Positions 233 through 8,381 of a stretch of DNA of 8,381 nucleotides are shown in pieces. Under the pieces are notes generated by a model, which saw only the letters and a program-made list of their open reading frames with translations, ran no database searches and was not told the DNA's origin. This DNA is from Salpingoeca rosetta (lineage: Eukaryota; Protista; Choanoflagellata), in contig JAWQFM010000019.1 of the NCBI GenBank assembly GCA_033442325.1, forward strand, positions 333,703 to 342,083. Direction: 5' to 3'. The translations under genes and the position numbers were made by a program. Position 1 is the first letter of the stretch; every line of letters starts with the position of its first letter.

Positions 233-849
233 GAGATGCGCCATCGCCCCGCCACGACAGTGACCGCCATGCGTGCTCCACTCGTCCTCGGCATATTCGG
301 TGATGATGATGTTGGGATTTGCCTGCAGGCATGAACGCAAACGGCTTTTGAGTAGCCCTGATGTTCTGTCGCTGGCAGCTCACTGAAACTCACGCATGCA
401 CATGCACGCGCGTGCACACACATGTACAGATCTGTGCATCGAGTACATGGTCAGCCACATGTCGCGAAGCTTTGACGTCGACGCATACACGTGAGCTGGT
501 GGCGAGCATGAATCGTTCAACGGAAAGGGGGCTGTCCGAGTCTCAATCAAGCCTGTTCACGCTCAAAACCTCCTCTGCTAATTCAAGCACACTCTGCTAC
601 AACATATACTTTCACTTACCCTCACACTCACACCCTCACACTCACACCCTTCGATGCGGGTCCCCTCCCCTCTCCTTCCTTTCACAACACACGCCCCCCC
701 GGTCCAATTGTGTGCGCCCGCGTGCCAGCCGGTGCCTGGAGGTGGTGCACCGGCTGCTGTGCTACCAGAAGACGCATCTCGTCCGCCTCAACTACGAGTG
801 GGCAAACCTCTGGTCCGCACTCTCGGCGCTCTTCAAGTTTGTCATCCAG
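233..849 (+). CDS. ARMH3: ARMH3/C10orf76-like (DUF1741, armadillo-like helical protein), partial; internal exons 233-299, 430-490, 729-849
   Basis: All three exons have cag acceptors and GT donors (gtgatg, gtgagc, gtaagc), and the two introns between them (phase 1, then phase 2) join in frame. Spliced peptide [83 protein letters not shown]. This matches, from memory, the C10orf76 motifs PMRHR...PLV..vlDL.vEf...HM...F..dlY.RC...vH.LLCYQK...vRL.Y.W.eLWsAL..l.KF. The 5' exons lie upstream of the window and the 3' exons are not seen. Confidence 0.85.
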
Positions 850-855
850 GTAAGC

Positions 856-870
856 GTGTGTGTATGTGAA

Positions 871-966
<96 letters not shown>

Positions 967-973
967 TGAGTGA

Positions 974-1014
<41 letters not shown>
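856..1014. repeat. Long (GT)n microsatellite with a (GAGT)n insert
   Basis: ~160 nt of GT repeat directly after the donor at 850. Confidence 0.95.
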
Positions 1015-1016
<2 letters not shown>

Positions 1017-1116
1017 CAATTTCGTGCATGGTTGGCCACCTTGTCACCTTGTATCATAACACATGTTCTCAAGAAGACCACACTATCAACGCCAACAACA
1101 TGTCTGATTCGCGAAG

Positions 1117-4156
<3,040 letters not shown>

Positions 4157-4448
4157 AGGAAGGAGTGGCGATTCAGTCTTACGACTGTTTGTGCTTTTGT
4201 GTCGTGTACCGCTTTTTGTTGAAGATTGCTGTTAAAGAGAGTTCTCGACAGCTTGAATGAAATTTCCACACGCGCGCGTTTCTCTGCCAGCAAAGCGAAA
4301 GAACAGGAAAAGGGAAGCCATTTTGCTCTGCACAACAACAAACTGTTGGTGTTTGAGTGTTGTGTCCTGAGGAGAAAGACTGACGTCCTGTCCTGCGGAG
4401 AGGAAAGCGAGTTGGCTACCCTCTTTGCCTGCCTCTTCGCCTGCCAGG

Positions 4449-7400
4449 ATGAGCGCACCAAAGCCGGTGCAGAAGAAGGCGTCCCAACGCAGCCGTCGCA
4501 AGAAGGTGTTCATTTCGCTGCGGTTCGGAGAGGCTGGCCATGCAGGCAAGCTGCTCAAGCGCGAGTTGGAGCAGGTGCACGGCCTGGACGTGTTCCTGTG
4601 TGATGTTGAGCCTGGTGGCAACATGGGAAAGGAAATCATCACGAACCTTGCGGCCTGTGACTTGGCTGTCATCATGGGCACCAAGACGTACGGCAAGGAG
4701 ACGCCATCCACCTTCAGCACGTTTCAAGAACTTGATTTCATCAAAAATGAGCGCAAGCCATTCTTCTTCATCAAGATGTGCGAGCGGCTTGAAGAGTCGT
4801 TTGCGCGATTCCACCTCCCCGATTCCATCTCCTACTTTCCATGGATACCTGCTTCACGCGATCCCGAGTCCATGTCCCTGCCGCCTGACCTCGCCCCCGC
4901 CATCGTAGACAAGCTCAGCCACATCAGCACCTCTAGCGGCGCGAAGGGCGGCAAAGGCGGCCCCTCCGTCATCACACGGCAGCTCCCAACCACGCTGGAC
5001 GCTGGCCTGACACAGTGGCTGCAGCGTTACAACATGTTGTCCTCCATGGGGCTGGTGCTTGAGAAACTCCACATCACAAGTCTTCACAAATTGGAGCAGG
5101 CAACAGAGGCCATGCGGAATCCGAGAAAGCGTGCACTTGCTAAGCGGCAGCAGCAGAAGCAGGGAAAGAAGGGAGGAGGGCAGGGAAGCGAACCCAAGCC
5201 AACAAAGACCGTGCGACAGTTGTATGAGGGAATACTGATGAGGGAGAAGCAGCTGCAGCCAGCAGAGATTGCCAAGTTCCGGCGAGCGTGCAAGGCGAAG
5301 ACGTGGCGCAACAAAGAGATGGGCAGTGAGCGACATGGAACGTTGGAAGGCACAGAAGAGGTGCACGAACAGGGAGATGAGAAGCAGGAAGAGGGACGTG
5401 AGGGGAGCCAAGAAGAACAGGAGGAGACACAGTCGCACCAGCATCAAGCGAGCGTTGAGTGCCCGCCTGTGCGAAAGGGTGTGGGAGACGAAACCCTGTT
5501 TCGGGAGTGCCTGCAGAGGGTGAGTGGTAAGAACGCAAGAAACAAGATCCTCAGCATTTGGAACAACACGTGTGGCTCGAAAGTTAAGTGAGTATGGACG
5601 TGTTACAAGGATATGCACCTGCAATTCATGAGTAGGGTCCTGGCGGTTTAATGTATCTGGCGTAAATAGAAGTGTGTGCACGATGCTTTGATGGATTGCC
5701 TGATGCGATGTGGCATTCACTCACATCAACACTTTGCACACACACACACATGCATGCATGTATGCGAATGAACACACATACGCACACATGATAACCACAA
5801 CACATGCACCATGCAGCCTTGCAGACAACGATCTTGGACCTGAAGGGGGAAAGGCGATTGGGGAGGCACTGAAGGTGAACACGACGCTGACATCGCTCGA
5901 GTGAGTTGTGCTGTTGTGGCTGTGGCCCTGGGTGTGCATATGTGCGGATTCGTGTGCACGTGCACGTGTGTTTGTGTGGGTGGCAGTGGGCACATTGTTG
6001 TGTTGATGTGGTGTTGATGTGTCTGGGTGAGACAGTGATGTGGTGTGTTGACAAGCGTGAGACGATACGACACACCTGTTTTGTTTTATGTGTGCGTGTG
6101 TGTATGTGAGTGTATGTGAGTGCATGTGGTCTAATTGATTTGCACTTGTGGTTCAGTGGCATGGTGATCGTGATAGTGAAAGGGGATGTGGGTGTGTGGA
6201 TGTAAGTTTTGACCTAAATAGGGGTTGGTTGATTTTCCCTGCCAAGATGTTTTCCCCTTTTGGGGGGGGGGGGGGTTGTGTGTTGTGGAGTAACATAACG
6301 TAATTTGTGGATGTGACATGGTGGTAGTTGTGTGTTTTGTGCAGGTGTGTTTTGGATAGGGATGTGGTGCACGATGCTTTGATGGATTGCCTGATGCGAT
6401 GTGGCATTCACTCACATCAACGCTTTGCACACACACACACACATGCACACACATGCATGCATGTATGCGAATGCACACACATACACACACATGATAACCA
6501 CAACACATGCACCATGCAGCCTTCGGAACAACGATCTTGGACCTGAAGGGGGAAAGGCGATTGGGGAGGCACTGAAGGTGAACACGACGCTGACATCGCT
6601 GGAGTGAGTTGTGTTGCTGTGGCCGTGGCCCTGGGTGTGCATATGTGCGGATTCGTGTGCACGTGCACGTGTGTTTGTGTGGGTGGCAGTGGGCACATTG
6701 TTGTGTTGATGTGGTGTTGATGTGTCTGGGTGAGACAGTGATGTGGTGTGTTGACAAGCGTGAGACGATACGACACACCTGTTTTGTTTTATGTGTGCGT
6801 GTGTGTATGTGAGTGTATGTGAGTGTGCATGTGGTGTAATTGATTTGCACTTGTGGTTCAGTGGCATGGTGATCATGATAGTGAAAGGGGATGTGGGTGT
6901 GTGGATGTGAGTGTTGAGCTAGATAGAGGTTGGTTGATGTTGCCTGACAAGATGTTGTCACACTATTGGGGGGGGGGGTTGTGGAGTAACGTAATTTGTG
7001 AATGTGACATGGTGGTAGTTGTGTGTTTTGTGCAGGTGAGTTTTGGACAGGGATGTGGTGCACGATGCTTTGATGGATTGCCTGATGCGATGTGGCATTC
7101 ACTCACATCAACGCTTTGCACACACACATACACACATGCACACACATGCATGCATGTATGCGAATGAACACACATACGCACACATGATAATCACAACACG
7201 TGCACCATGCAGCCTTTACAGCAACAATCTTAGACCTGAAGGGGGAAAGGCGATTGGGGAGGCACTGAAGGTGAACACGACGCTGACATCGCTGGAGTGA
7301 GTTGTGTTGCTGTGGCCGTGGCCCTGGGTGTGCATATGTGCGGATTCGTGTGCACGTGCACGTGTGTTTGTGTGGGTGGCAGTGGGCACATTGTTGTGTT

Positions 7401-7997
7401 GATGTGGTGTTGATGTGTCTGGGTGAGACAGTGATGTGGTGTGTTGACAAGCGTGAGACGATACAACACACCTGTTTTGTTTTTATATATGTGTGTGTGT
7501 ATGTGTGTGTGTGTGTGTGAGTGCATGTGGTCTCATTGATTTGCACTTGTGGTTCAGTGGCATGGTGATCATGATAGTGAAAGGGGGTGTGGGTGTGTGG
7601 ATGTGAGTGTTGAGCTAGATAGAGGTTGGTTGATGTTGGTTGACAAGATGTTGTCACACTATGGGGGTTGTGTGTTGTGGAGTAACATAACGTAATTTGT
7701 GAATGTGACATGGTGGTAGTTGTGTGTTTTGTGCAGGTGAGTTTTGGACAGGGATGTTGTGCACGATGCCTTGATGGATTGTCTGATGCGATGTGACATT
7801 CACTCACATCAACACTTTACACACACACACACACACATGCACACACATGCATGCATGTATGCGAATGAACACACATACACACACATGATAACCACAAAAC
7901 ATGCACCATGCAGCCTTGACGGCAACGATCTTGGACCTGAAGGGGGAAAGGCGATTGGGGAGGCACTGAAGGTGAACACGACGCTGACATCGCTCTC
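4449..7997 (+). CDS. TIR - SAM-like - LRR protein (candidate intracellular immune receptor), 3' partial; exons 4449-5587, 5817-5900, 6520-6603, 7213-7296, 7914-7997
   Basis: ATG at 4449 opens a 1139-nt exon ending in phase 2 at aa|gtgagt (5588). Four 84-nt phase 2-2 exons follow (atgcag|c ... |gtgagt) and splice in frame to ...NNTCGSKVNLADNDLGPEGGKAIGEALKVNTTLTSLDLRNNDLGPEGGKAIGEALKVNTTLTSLDLYSNNLRPEGGKAIGEALKVNTTLTSLDLDGNDLGPEGGKAIGEALKVNTTLTSLS. No stop is reached before the window end. Confidence 0.85.
4506..4916 (+). other. TIR domain (TIR_2-like)
   Basis: betaA KVFISLR, alphaA AGKLLKRELEQ, betaB GLDVFLCD, BB-loop EPGGN, alphaB KEIITNLAAC, betaC DLAVIMGTKTY, alphaC STFQELDF with Glu at 4728-4730, betaD KPFFFIK. 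Confidence 0.8.
4995..5291 (+). other. SAM-like helical segment with a basic low-complexity insertion
   Basis: LTQWLQRYNM.S.MGLVLEKLHITSLHKL ... LQPAEIAKFRRAC resembles the SAM pattern (W-L-x3-L, helix 3-4, terminal helix). It is interrupted by a K/Q/G-rich stretch. Recognised by pattern only. Confidence 0.4.
5817..5900 (+). CDS. LRR exon 1 (RI-like 28-aa repeat; variable codons GCA GAC = A,D)
   Basis: 84 nt, cag/gt bounded, phase 2-2. Confidence 0.9.
6520..6603 (+). CDS. LRR exon 2 (variable codons CGG AAC = R,N)
   Basis: 84 nt, cag/gt bounded, phase 2-2. Confidence 0.9.
7213..7296 (+). CDS. LRR exon 3 (variable codons TAC AGC = Y,S; also D>N and G>R)
   Basis: 84 nt, cag/gt bounded, phase 2-2. 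Confidence 0.9.
7914..7997 (+). CDS. LRR exon 4 (variable codons GAC GGC = D,G; split codon TC- = S)
   Basis: 84 nt, cag/gt bounded, phase 2-2. Confidence 0.9.
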
Positions 7998-8290
7998 GTG
8001 AGTTGTGTTGTTGTGGCCGTGACCCTGAGCGTGCATATGTGCCAATTCGTGTGCACGTGCACGTGTGTTTGTGTGGGTGGCAGTGGGCACATTGCTGTGT
8101 TGATGTGGTGTTGATGTGTCTGGGTGAGACAGTGATGTGGTGTGTTGACAAGCGTGAGACGATACGACACACCTGTTTTGTTTTATGTGTGTGTGTGTGT
8201 GTGTGTGAGTGTATGTGAGTGTGCATGTGCTGTAATTAATTTGCGCTTTTGCTTCAGTGGCTTGGCGATCTTTTTATTCAATGGTTTTCT

Positions 8291-8294
<4 letters not shown>

Positions 8295-8330
<36 letters not shown>
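8295..8330. repeat. Poly-T run, probably low-quality contig end
   Basis: Similarity to the repeat unit decays from ~8230 and is lost after 8270, followed by T/C homopolymers. Confidence 0.6.
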
Positions 8331-8381
8331 CTCTCCCCTCCTACCCGCTGTCGTTCCCCTTTTTTGTTTCCCTTCCCGCTA

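What the first reader, a model, noticed from the sequence alone, without database searches (positions are those of the whole stretch)
5817..7997. Hypervariability confined to ligand-facing LRR codons within otherwise identical exons
Seen: the 19 codons PEGGKAIGEALKVNTTLTS (57 nt) are identical in all four exons, including silent sites. The two codons after the first Leu differ in every copy: GCA GAC (AD), CGG AAC (RN), TAC AGC (YS), GAC GGC (DG), with up to 4 of 6 bases changed between neighbours. The other differences are GAT>AAT and GGA>AGA (exon 3), the intron-split codon GA->TC- (D>S, exon 4) and one silent CTC/CTG. Known: in the LxxLxLxxNxL motif these x positions line the solvent-exposed concave beta-sheet face that binds ligand. 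Inference: strong diversifying selection, or a targeted mutation or micro-conversion process near the splice junctions, acting against a homogenised background.
Basis: partly seen in the sequence, partly recalled or inferred. Interest (0 to 1): 0.85.

Follow-up and report, generated by a model that had tools for sequence, protein, structure and literature searches.

The report
Fast-evolving binding codons in repeated LRR exons
In a choanoflagellate (Salpingoeca rosetta) receptor-like gene, a 700-base exon-plus-intron unit encoding one leucine-rich repeat was copied in tandem recently, and only the few codons that face the presumed ligand have since changed, about 17 times faster than the introns; this is a clean new case of a pattern already described in brown-alga ROCO genes and plant resistance genes.

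Summary
Four 84-nt exons lie in the window and two more just beyond it. All six share an identical 57-nt core and carry six different hexamers at exon nt 5-10. Mean pairwise difference is 0.59 in the hexamer, 0.04-0.05 in the flanking introns and 0.03 in the rest of the exon. On a tree of the units, the hexamer plus the intron-split codon took 18 steps in 8 sites, where 1.1 are expected at the intron rate (P=2.5e-16).

The gene is TIR-like / RI-type LRR / Roc-COR (a ROCO protein) of Salpingoeca rosetta. The same positions (x3, x5, x7, x8, x10 of LxxLxLxxNxL) are hypervariable in 128 sampled exons of at least 147 one-LRR exons of LRR-Roc-COR genes genome-wide.

Best reading: recent tandem cassette amplification plus diversifying selection on concave-face residues. 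I found no donor templates, no synonymous excess in the variable codons and no change between culture data sets. Targeted mutation or micro-conversion is therefore unsupported.

The closest precedent is the brown-alga LRR-ROCO exon-cassette family, so this is a new member of a known kind. Two first-stage notes on this same stretch (s1-432398, s1-432485) and notes on other pieces of this genome overlap with it.

The parts
4449..5587 (+). Exon 1 of the gene: N-terminal TIR-like domain plus linker. It ends with 2 bases of a split codon, the same phase as the LRR exons.
   Evidence: It is a 379-aa open frame. Pfam TIR_2 is weak for this copy (E=0.17), but 7 of 9 aligned relatives match TIR_2 (best E=1e-6). 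Paralogs are 75-76% identical.
5817..5900 (+). LRR exon 1 (84 nt, one 28-residue RI-type LRR). Hexamer 5821-5826 is GCAGAC (AD). Split codon 5899-5900 is GA, plus C of the next exon (D).
   Evidence: Pfam LRR_6 E=7.5e-4.
5901..6519 (+). Intron of unit 1 (gtgagt...cag), part of the ~700-bp tandem unit.
   Evidence: It is 90-93% identical to the other full introns of this array, and full-length copies occur nowhere else in the genome. Unit spacing is 703, 693 and 701 nt.
6520..6603 (+). LRR exon 2. Hexamer 6524-6529 is CGGAAC (RN). Split codon is GA.
6604..7212 (+). Intron of unit 2.
7213..7296 (+). LRR exon 3. Hexamer 7217-7222 is TACAGC (YS). It also has GAT>AAT (x10, D>N) and GGA>AGA (G>R). 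Split codon is GA.
7297..7913 (+). Intron of unit 3.
7914..7997 (+). LRR exon 4. Hexamer 7918-7923 is GACGGC (DG). Split codon is TC (S).
7998..8381 (+). Start of the intron of unit 4. It is homologous to the other introns for ~270 nt, then leaves the repeat (T36 run, CT-rich) and runs into an N gap of ~1 kb beyond the window. The gene continues with 2 more LRR exons, a Roc exon, a COR exon and a C-terminal exon at G000:C19:343305-346584.
   Evidence: Roc: Pfam PF08477, E=9.7e-9. COR-A: E=0.002.

Best explanation
The window holds the 5' half of a Salpingoeca rosetta gene for a TIR-like / LRR / Roc-COR (ROCO) protein. Each 28-residue RI-type leucine-rich repeat is one 84-nt exon flanked by phase-2 introns.

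One ~700-bp exon-plus-intron cassette was amplified in tandem recently, most simply by unequal crossing-over. That is why silent sites and introns are still 95% alike.

Since then, germline substitutions have been fixed about 17 times faster than in the introns. This happened only at the codons for x5, x7 and x8, and to a lesser degree x10, of LxxLxLxxNxL. These residues lie in, or directly after, the beta-strand on the concave face. The cause I favour is positive diversifying selection for new binding specificities.

Shown here: the exon and intron anatomy, the youth of the cassettes, the rate excess, the lack of a synonymous excess, the family-wide repetition of the pattern, and the strand or loop position in a model of the paralog.

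Inferred: that selection rather than mutation bias drives the pattern, that the face binds a ligand, and that the protein is a sensor whose Roc-COR switch relays binding.
For: - Anatomy: the gtgagt and cag borders, constant phase and unbroken frame run from exon 1 through six LRR exons into the Roc exon.
- The annotated paralog PTSG_06523 is spliced at the same junctions.
- Exons are 80-92% conserved between paralogs whose introns are unalignable.
- Youth of the cassettes: introns are 88-98% alike within the array, and the only similarity elsewhere is one 73% partial match in the C17 paralog.
- Rate excess: mean pairwise difference is 0.59 in the hexamer, 0.04-0.05 in introns and 0.029 in the rest of the exon. 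Steps per site on the unit tree are 2.25, 0.136 and 0.053 respectively, P=2.5e-16.
- Proportion of non-synonymous differences at x7 and x8 is 0.68, against a synonymous proportion of 0.029 in the framework.
- Generality: amino-acid entropy peaks at x7, x8, x3, x5 and x10 in the large paralogous family.
- In 97 unit pairs with flanking introns at least 90% alike, exon nt 5-10 differ at 0.24-0.69 per site.
- In 27 mutual-nearest pairs with 4.2% intron divergence, the variable codons show 67 non-synonymous and 3 synonymous differences. The framework shows 16 and 27.
- Structure: the model of the paralog array has mean pLDDT 81 and strands at S-L-x5-L, with x7 and x8 next. Its fold matches RI, NLRP1, NOD2 and DRC5 LRRs at TM 0.7-0.84 normalised by query length.
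- Precedent: the same positions are under positive selection in brown-alga LRR-ROCO exons (PMC3341825, PMC11378527).
Against: - There are only six cassettes in this gene, and an N gap of ~1 kb probably hides at least one more.
- If gene conversion homogenises the background, the neutral yardstick is too small and the rate ratio is inflated.
- Multi-base codon differences are in excess (40 of 67 differing variable codons). Block replacement would also produce this.
- YS (TAC AGC) recurs as TAC AGT in the C17 paralog, and the first LRR of both genes starts with GCA. This hints that some hexamers may be old.
- No likelihood codon model was run (PAML and HyPhy are not on hand).
- Splicing is not confirmed by RNA, because only 6 RNA reads could be laid.
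- No ligand or function is known.
- The focal array itself could not be folded, so the structural mapping rests on the paralog.
Confidence: 0.65

Rival explanations
1. Concerted evolution with retention. The repeats and their distinct hexamers are old. Repeated gene conversion or unequal exchange has homogenised the scaffold codons and introns, while selection rejects any tract that erases the differences at the specificity codons.
For: - Tandem repeats of 95% identity are good substrates for conversion.
- YS in focal repeat 3 and in a C17 repeat (TAC AGC and TAC AGT), and GCA as the first variable codon of the first LRR in both genes, could be retained ancestral states.
- TALE repeats show the same picture of identical repeats with variable diresidues (my own knowledge).
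Against: - Identity resumes within 1-4 nt on both sides of every hexamer.
- There is no halo of linked old divergence. The 50 nt upstream vary at the ordinary intron level, and the 72 nt downstream are invariant apart from two unit-3-specific changes at exon nt 14 and 20.
- Intron variants are largely shared in nested groups of units rather than a patchwork.
- Two dipeptide resemblances among about 30 comparisons are weak evidence.
- Many youngest pairs in the family are still identical at the hexamer, as expected if duplication comes first and divergence later.
Confidence: 0.2
2. Block replacement by exon or cassette shuffling. The hexamers and split codons were imported as short blocks from other cassettes, either in other family members or in cassettes hidden in the assembly gaps, rather than built by point substitutions.
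For: - Two- and three-base codon differences are in excess between nearest-neighbour units.
- In the large paralogous family the same dipeptides recur in many units: 63 distinct hexamers in 128 exons, with YN 11 times and DN 10 times.
- Units are as alike between loci as within them.
- Exon shuffling is the published model for brown-alga ROCOs (PMC3341825).
- Unassembled gaps lie inside the focal and the C17 arrays.
Against: - None of the six focal hexamers occurs in any of 122 other sampled exons.
- The flank pattern occurs only at the six exons and one C17 exon in the whole assembly.
- Paralog exons differ in their framework, so an imported tract would have to be under about 10 nt.
Confidence: 0.07
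3. A programmed or targeted mutational process aimed at the codons next to the splice junctions: somatic hypermutation, DGR-like or VLR-like templated change.
For: - The differences are extremely local and dense, with up to 4 of 6 bases changed between neighbours.
- They abut both splice sites.
Against: - No donor templates were found.
- Changes involve all four bases, not adenines only.
- Synonymous differences in the variable codons are at the neutral level: 3 among 122 same-residue codons.
- A C17 cassette pair has 3 framework changes but identical hexamers.
- No other letters appear at the hexamers in contigs of DNA runs from 2013 and 2024. This test is weak, because contigs drop rare variants.
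Confidence: 0.05
4. Assembly artefact: reads from a collapsed or mis-joined tandem repeat, or from paralogs, were mixed so that the differences are not real.
For: - The array is flanked by N gaps.
- The intron of unit 4 leaves the repeat just before a gap.
- The C17 paralog array has a 5.2-kb gap.
Against: - Each hexamer sits in its own set of linked intron variants, and these variants are largely shared in nested groups of units.
- Contigs from independent runs of 2013 and 2024 lie on every exon bin without other letters at the hexamers.
- Paralog exons differ in the framework, so they cannot be the source.
Confidence: 0.03

Closest known systems
Brown-alga (Ectocarpus, Saccharina) LRR-ROCO genes with exon shuffling (Zambounis et al. 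2012, PMC3341825; PMC11378527)
   Same: - LRR-Roc-COR core.
- One LRR per exon, with symmetric phase-2 exons.
- Repetitive intron-exon cassettes and a multigene family.
- Positive selection at the x3, x5, x7 and x8 positions, mapped to the concave face.
- Proposed role as immune receptors.
   Different: - Here the repeat is the 28-residue RI type (84-nt exon) rather than a 24-residue repeat (72-nt exon).
- The intron cuts inside the beta-strand segment, between x5 and L6.
- This subfamily adds an N-terminal TIR-like domain, and other members carry PARP.
- The organism is a choanoflagellate (Holozoa), not a stramenopile.
- Introns of the focal array are still ~95% identical.
- I did not find intronic or antisense pseudo-LRR exons, and I could not test alternative splicing.
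Plant resistance genes and receptor-like proteins (Cf-4/9, NLR LRR domains): hypervariable solvent-exposed xxLxLxx residues
   Same: Diversifying selection is concentrated on the x residues of the LRR beta-strand, against a conserved scaffold, in families that evolve by birth and death (my own knowledge).
   Different: In plants the comparison is between paralogous genes or alleles, and LRRs are usually many to an exon. Here it is between tandem single-repeat exons of one gene whose introns give an internal neutral yardstick.
TAL effector repeats (repeat-variable diresidue)
   Same: Near-identical tandem repeats at DNA level in which two adjacent residues per repeat carry the specificity (my own knowledge).
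   Different: TALE repeats have a different fold and bind DNA. They are bacterial and have no introns. Here x5 and x10 vary as well, and no one-repeat-one-target code is known.
Lamprey and hagfish variable lymphocyte receptors
   Same: LRR cassettes with hypervariable concave residues.
   Different: VLRs are assembled somatically from hundreds of flanking donor cassettes. Here the gene is complete in the germline with ordinary introns, and no donor cassettes exist in the assembly.
Ribonuclease inhibitor and vertebrate NLR LRR domains (modular LRR exons)
   Same: The same RI-type LRR fold (fold search hits to 1a4y, 3tsr, 5y3s and 5irn). Exon boundaries are in register with the repeats, and growth is by exon duplication (my own knowledge).
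   Different: RI and NLR exons encode two repeats (about 57 residues) and are old and diverged throughout. They are not known for near-identical introns with hypervariable codons.

Membership tests
ROCO (Roc-COR) proteins | Roc (Ras of complex) GTPase domain | tested here: met
   The exon at L016:6788-7846 matches Pfam Roc PF08477 with E=9.7e-9 and 35.9 bits (cut-off 27). A P-loop GHYGIGKT and a DFAGQ motif are visible.
ROCO (Roc-COR) proteins | COR domain directly after Roc | tested here: inconclusive
   COR-A PF16095 gives E=0.0021 and 18.4 bits, below the cut-off of 35.3, for L016:7961-8569. A family member at L033 scores 34.9 bits. UniRef names the S. rosetta paralogs PTSG_12838 and PTSG_08667 as COR domain-containing.
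ROCO (Roc-COR) proteins | LRR domain N-terminal to Roc | tested here: met
   Six LRR exons lie between exon 1 and the Roc exon, in one frame.
RI-type (LRR_6) leucine-rich repeats | 28-29-residue period with LxxLxLxxN/CxL and an alpha-helical convex side | tested here: met
   - The period is 28 residues.
- Single repeats match Pfam LRR_6 at E=7.5e-4 to 0.018 (15.5-19.8 bits, below the 23.4 cut-off, as expected for one repeat).
- The model of the paralog array alternates strand and helix.
- It matches RI, NLRP1, NOD2 and DRC5 at TM 0.7-0.84 normalised by query length.
Exon-cassette LRR-ROCO receptors (brown-alga type) | Each LRR encoded by its own exon of constant length and symmetric phase | tested here: met
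   The exons are 84 nt with phase 2 on both sides, in this gene and in at least 147 matches genome-wide. The brown-alga exons are 72 nt.
Exon-cassette LRR-ROCO receptors (brown-alga type) | Positive selection confined to concave-face x positions | tested here: met
   Counting methods only. No likelihood site model was run.
Exon-cassette LRR-ROCO receptors (brown-alga type) | Alternative splicing or skipping of LRR exons; intronic or antisense LRR relics | not testable with these tools
   Only 6 RNA reads could be laid on the gene. The introns of the focal array hold no LRR-like open exon (pattern scan), but this was not searched exhaustively.
Templated or programmed diversification systems (VLR-like, DGR-like) | Donor or template copies of the variable segment | tested here: not met
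   The flank pattern with a free hexamer occurs only at the six exons and one paralog exon in 55 Mb. No focal hexamer is found in 122 other family exons.
Templated or programmed diversification systems (VLR-like, DGR-like) | Variation arising within a clonal lineage | tested here: inconclusive
   No other letters appear at the hexamers in contigs of runs from 2013 and 2024. Contigs hide rare variants, and raw DNA reads were not available.
TIR domain | Sequence match to a TIR profile | tested here: inconclusive
   The focal copy gives TIR_2 E=0.17, but 7 of 9 aligned relatives match TIR_2, best E=1e-6. Catalytic residues were not examined.

The most novel reading that the evidence does not exclude
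Salpingoeca rosetta, a close unicellular relative of animals, keeps a large LRR-Roc-COR receptor repertoire whose big subfamily is apparently subtelomeric. Each single-repeat exon would carry a short specificity code (x5, x7, x8). New specificities would arise not only by germline selection but also by programmed means: in-frame exon skipping, cassette exchange between loci, or somatic change during clonal growth. That would be an adaptive-like diversification system outside animals.
Probability: 0.07. Interest if true: 0.85.

Novelty: new member of a known kind. Interest (0 to 1): 0.5.

Why it matters
Choanoflagellates are the reference point for what the first animals inherited, and little is known about how they recognise bacteria, viruses or prey. 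This gene and its family show the genomic marks of arms-race receptors:
- cassette amplification;
- replacement changes confined to the binding face;
- copy-number differences between paralogs;
- effector-like TIR and PARP domains.

These marks sit on a Roc-COR switch rather than an NLR-type ATPase. This gives a concrete, genetically tractable set of candidate immune sensors in S. rosetta.

It also shows that the exon-cassette LRR-ROCO design described in brown algae occurs, or arose again, in the lineage next to animals. The near-identical introns give an unusually clean internal neutral control for measuring selection on single residues.

Tried and rejected
- Tandem Repeats Finder missed the ~700-bp unit because its longest period is 500. 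The repeat finder and MAFFT recovered it.
- RNA evidence for splicing failed. One raw RNA run gave 6 reads on 6 kb.
- The presumed RNA contig run X18 also covers introns.
- X18's joints have sides of 21-30 letters and CT..AC ends. The one joint in the DNA runs has AC..AC ends. I treat all of these as k-mer artefacts in repeats, not as antisense splicing.
- The search for homologous proteins with exon 1 did not return the gene's own product, which is probably too long for the length filter. It gave only TIR-like relatives.
- The spliced focal LRR array has no reference, so I did not type it in. I folded the annotated closest paralog PTSG_06523, residues 1-185, instead.
- The PDB profile search with the 27-residue repeat gave only generic RI-type LRR proteins.
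- The donor-template search was negative.
- The intron is not a dispersed repeat. Only a CA-rich microsatellite-like tail matches elsewhere.
- Rfam finds nothing in the window.
- Relaxed constraint is rejected, because the rate exceeds the intron rate 17-fold.
- Literature searches pairing Salpingoeca with ROCO or Roc-COR found no description of this family in the held library. That is absence of evidence only.
Full report
**Observation.** The 57-nt core occurs exactly four times in the window. It lies inside four 84-nt segments bounded by ...catgcag| and |gtgagt, at 5817-5900, 6520-6603, 7213-7296 and 7914-7997. The hexamers at exon nt 5-10 are GCAGAC, CGGAAC, TACAGC and GACGGC. Unit 3 has single changes at nt 14 and nt 20. 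There is a silent CTC/CTG at nt 82, and GA versus TC at nt 83-84.

**The gene.**
- The window is G000:C19:333703-342083.
- Exon 1 (4449-5587) is a 379-aa open frame that ends two bases into a codon, in the same phase as the 84-nt exons.
- Its N-terminus is TIR-like. It scores TIR_2 E=0.17 on its own, but 7 of 9 aligned relatives match TIR_2, with best E=1e-6.
- Beyond the window the gene goes on, after an N gap of ~1 kb, with two more 84-nt exons. They carry the same 57-nt core and hexamers CGCGTC and GACCGC.
- Next comes an exon that begins with a last LRR strand and holds a Roc GTPase (PF08477, E=9.7e-9, above the cut-off), then a COR-A-like exon (E=0.002, below the cut-off) and a C-terminal exon.
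- The protein is therefore TIR-like / LRR / Roc-COR, a ROCO protein.
- The repeats are RI-type (Pfam LRR_6).

**Organism.** The closest database protein (87% identity in Roc) is PTSG_06523 of Salpingoeca rosetta ATCC 50818. Two further paralogs, PTSG_12838 and PTSG_08667, have the same TIR-like / LRR / Roc-COR order but ordinary, heterogeneous LRRs. The contig length of PTSG_08667 (1,067,092) equals that of G000:C26. The genome is S. rosetta. PTSG_06523 is the annotated product of the paralog on C17, and it is spliced at exactly the junctions I infer here, with split codons read as H, N, N, N.

**How non-random is it?**
- Over the six cassettes, mean pairwise difference is 0.59 in the hexamer. 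It is 0.039 in the upstream intron, 0.051 in the downstream intron and 0.029 in the rest of the exon. Most of that last figure comes from nt 82-84.
- On a maximum-likelihood tree built from the background columns, introns took 0.136 parsimony steps per site and the 76 framework bases took 0.053.
- The eight bases of the hexamer plus the split codon took 2.25 steps per site. That is 18 steps where 1.09 are expected (Poisson P=2.5e-16).
- Seven of those 8 columns vary, against 73 of 616 intron columns (Fisher P=3e-6).
- A rate 17 times the intronic rate cannot come from relaxed constraint.

**Age of the cassettes.**
- The introns of this array are 88-98% alike among themselves.
- They are not alignable with the introns of the three close paralogs (C17:478-491k, C2:396-402k, C19:106-111k), whose other domains are 75-86% identical in protein.
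- The only similarity outside the array is one 73% partial match inside the C17 gene. All other matches are to a CA-rich, microsatellite-like part.
- The array is therefore a recent, gene-specific tandem amplification of one cassette.
- Intron variants are largely shared in nested groups of units: u2, u3, u4 and u5 group together with u4 and u5 as sisters, while u1 and u6 join at the base.

**A larger exon set.**
- A profile of the repeat finds at least 147 matches in the genome, nearly all as isolated 84-nt exons in arrays. I collected 130 exons from 24 regions, and 128 with clean flanks were used for the pair analyses.
- Most belong to a large family (consensus L-x-x-N-S-I-G-D/P-E-G-A-V-A-L-A-E-M-L-K-H-N-T-T-L-x-x-L). 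Its genes are also LRR-Roc-COR, and one has a PARP-like exon.
- In this family, amino-acid entropy is 3.0-3.6 bits at x7, x8, x3 and x5, and 1.8 bits at x10. It is at most 1.5 bits at every other position.
- The proportion of non-synonymous differences at x7 and x8 is 0.60, against a synonymous proportion of 0.20 in the framework.
- In 97 unit pairs whose 90-nt intron flanks are both at least 90% alike, exon nt 5-7 differ at 0.53-0.69 per site, nt 8-10 at 0.24-0.33 and nt 83-84 at 0.30-0.54. Most framework bases differ at 0-0.05.
- I also took 27 mutual nearest-neighbour pairs, which are roughly independent contrasts, with mean intron divergence 4.2%. The seven variable codons show 67 non-synonymous and 3 synonymous codon differences. 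The 21 framework codons show 16 and 27.
- Variation is therefore not spread evenly, and the ratio at the variable sites is well above 1.

**Structure.** The spliced focal array has no reference, so I folded residues 1-185 of the paralog PTSG_06523. The model has mean pLDDT 81 and pTM 0.74.
- It alternates short strands and helices.
- The strands cover S-L-x5-L (residues 60-63, 88-90, 116-118 and 144-146).
- The x7 and x8 residues follow the strand directly, before the conserved Asn.
- Foldseek matches RI-type LRR domains, including DRC5, tropomodulin, NLRP1, ribonuclease inhibitor complexes and NOD2, at TM 0.7-0.84 normalised by query length.
- Side-chain exposure could not be computed here. 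That x3, x5, x7 and x8 face the concave surface follows from the established LRR geometry and from the mapping published for brown-alga ROCOs.

**Selection or a targeted process?** Five results speak against a targeted mutator or templated micro-conversion.
- The hexamer flanks with a free hexamer occur at only seven places in the assembly: the six exons and the first LRR exon of the C17 paralog.
- None of the six hexamers is found in 122 other family exons.
- Among variable codons that still encode the same residue, synonymous differences are at the neutral level: 3 in 122 codons.
- Two cassettes of the C17 paralog have three framework differences yet identical hexamers and split codons. Nine of the 27 nearest pairs are identical throughout the exon. 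Duplication therefore comes first and divergence is not automatic.
- Contigs of DNA runs from 2013 and 2024 lie on all exon bins and show no other letters at the hexamers. This test is weak, because contigs drop rare variants.

One rival I cannot dismiss is that conversion keeps the scaffold uniform while selection preserves older hexamers. It is hinted at by YS recurring in the C17 gene. Against it stands the way identity resumes within a few bases of each hexamer, with no linked halo of divergence. The excess of two- and three-base codon differences leaves some room for block exchange, especially in the large family, where units are as alike between loci as within them.

**Comparison with what is known.** The closest described system is the LRR-ROCO family of Ectocarpus and kelps. 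It has one LRR per 72-nt phase-2 exon, repetitive intron-exon cassettes, and positive selection at four concave-face positions equivalent to x3, x5, x7 and x8. An immune-receptor role has been proposed for it (PMC3341825, PMC11378527). The present case shares all of that. It differs in these ways:
- the repeat class is RI-type (28 residues, 84 nt);
- the intron lies inside the strand segment;
- this subfamily has a TIR-like head;
- the lineage is Holozoa;
- the introns still serve as a clean neutral control.

Searches of the held literature found nothing that links Salpingoeca with ROCO genes. I file it as a new member of a known kind.

**Limits.**
- Only six cassettes are visible and there is a gap in the array.
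- RNA does not confirm the splicing.
- I used counting methods rather than likelihood site models.
- The structural mapping rests on a paralog.
- There are no functional data.

Noticed in passing
G000 contigs C34:13k, C15:13k, C26:15k, C32:23k, C29:24k, C4:32k, C2:33k, C35:35k, C36:35k, C25:50k, C30:54k, C13:1711k, C27:1042k, C26:1052k, C28:973k, C20:1235k (loci L023-L039): The large LRR-Roc-COR family with one LRR per 84-nt exon lies mostly 13-60 kb from contig ends, so it is apparently subtelomeric. Its exon-plus-intron units are as alike between loci as within a locus, which suggests recent spread or exchange among chromosome ends.
   Followed up: partly
L033:8264-9382 (G000:C34): An LRR-Roc-COR gene of the large family is followed by an open frame with a PARP catalytic-domain match (E=1.2e-5, just under the Pfam cut-off). 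ROCO genes of this genome carry different effector-like ends: TIR-like here, PARP there.
   Followed up: no
window 3086-3551; beyond the window G000:C19:342084-343098; G000:C17:480731-485905: There are runs of N in the upstream gene's intron region and inside both recently amplified LRR cassette arrays. The tandem cassettes are where the assembly breaks, so cassette numbers are lower bounds.
   Followed up: partly
window 8270-8381: The intron of unit 4 leaves the repeat consensus after ~270 nt and turns into a T36 run and CT-rich sequence just before the gap. This may be an insertion or a mis-join at the gap edge.
   Followed up: no
window ~720-4156 (+): The upstream neighbour is a multi-exon Gfo/Idh/MocA-type oxidoreductase gene. 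The exon at 2051-2257 matches PF01408 at E=3.6e-12. Its introns are full of long GT/AC microsatellites.
   Followed up: partly
L020:6012-6095 and 6487-6570 (G000:C17): Two cassettes of the paralog PTSG_06523 have identical hexamers (GCCCAC, AH) and split codons but three framework differences, one of them V>F. They are a duplicated pair that has not diverged at the specificity codons.
   Followed up: yes
L016:1455-2042 and 3165-6509: Contigs of run X18 show joints whose skipped parts end CT..AC, which would read GT..AG on the minus strand. Only 21-30 letters lie on the shorter side, so these are probably k-mer joins in repeats. An antisense spliced transcript was not excluded.
   Followed up: no
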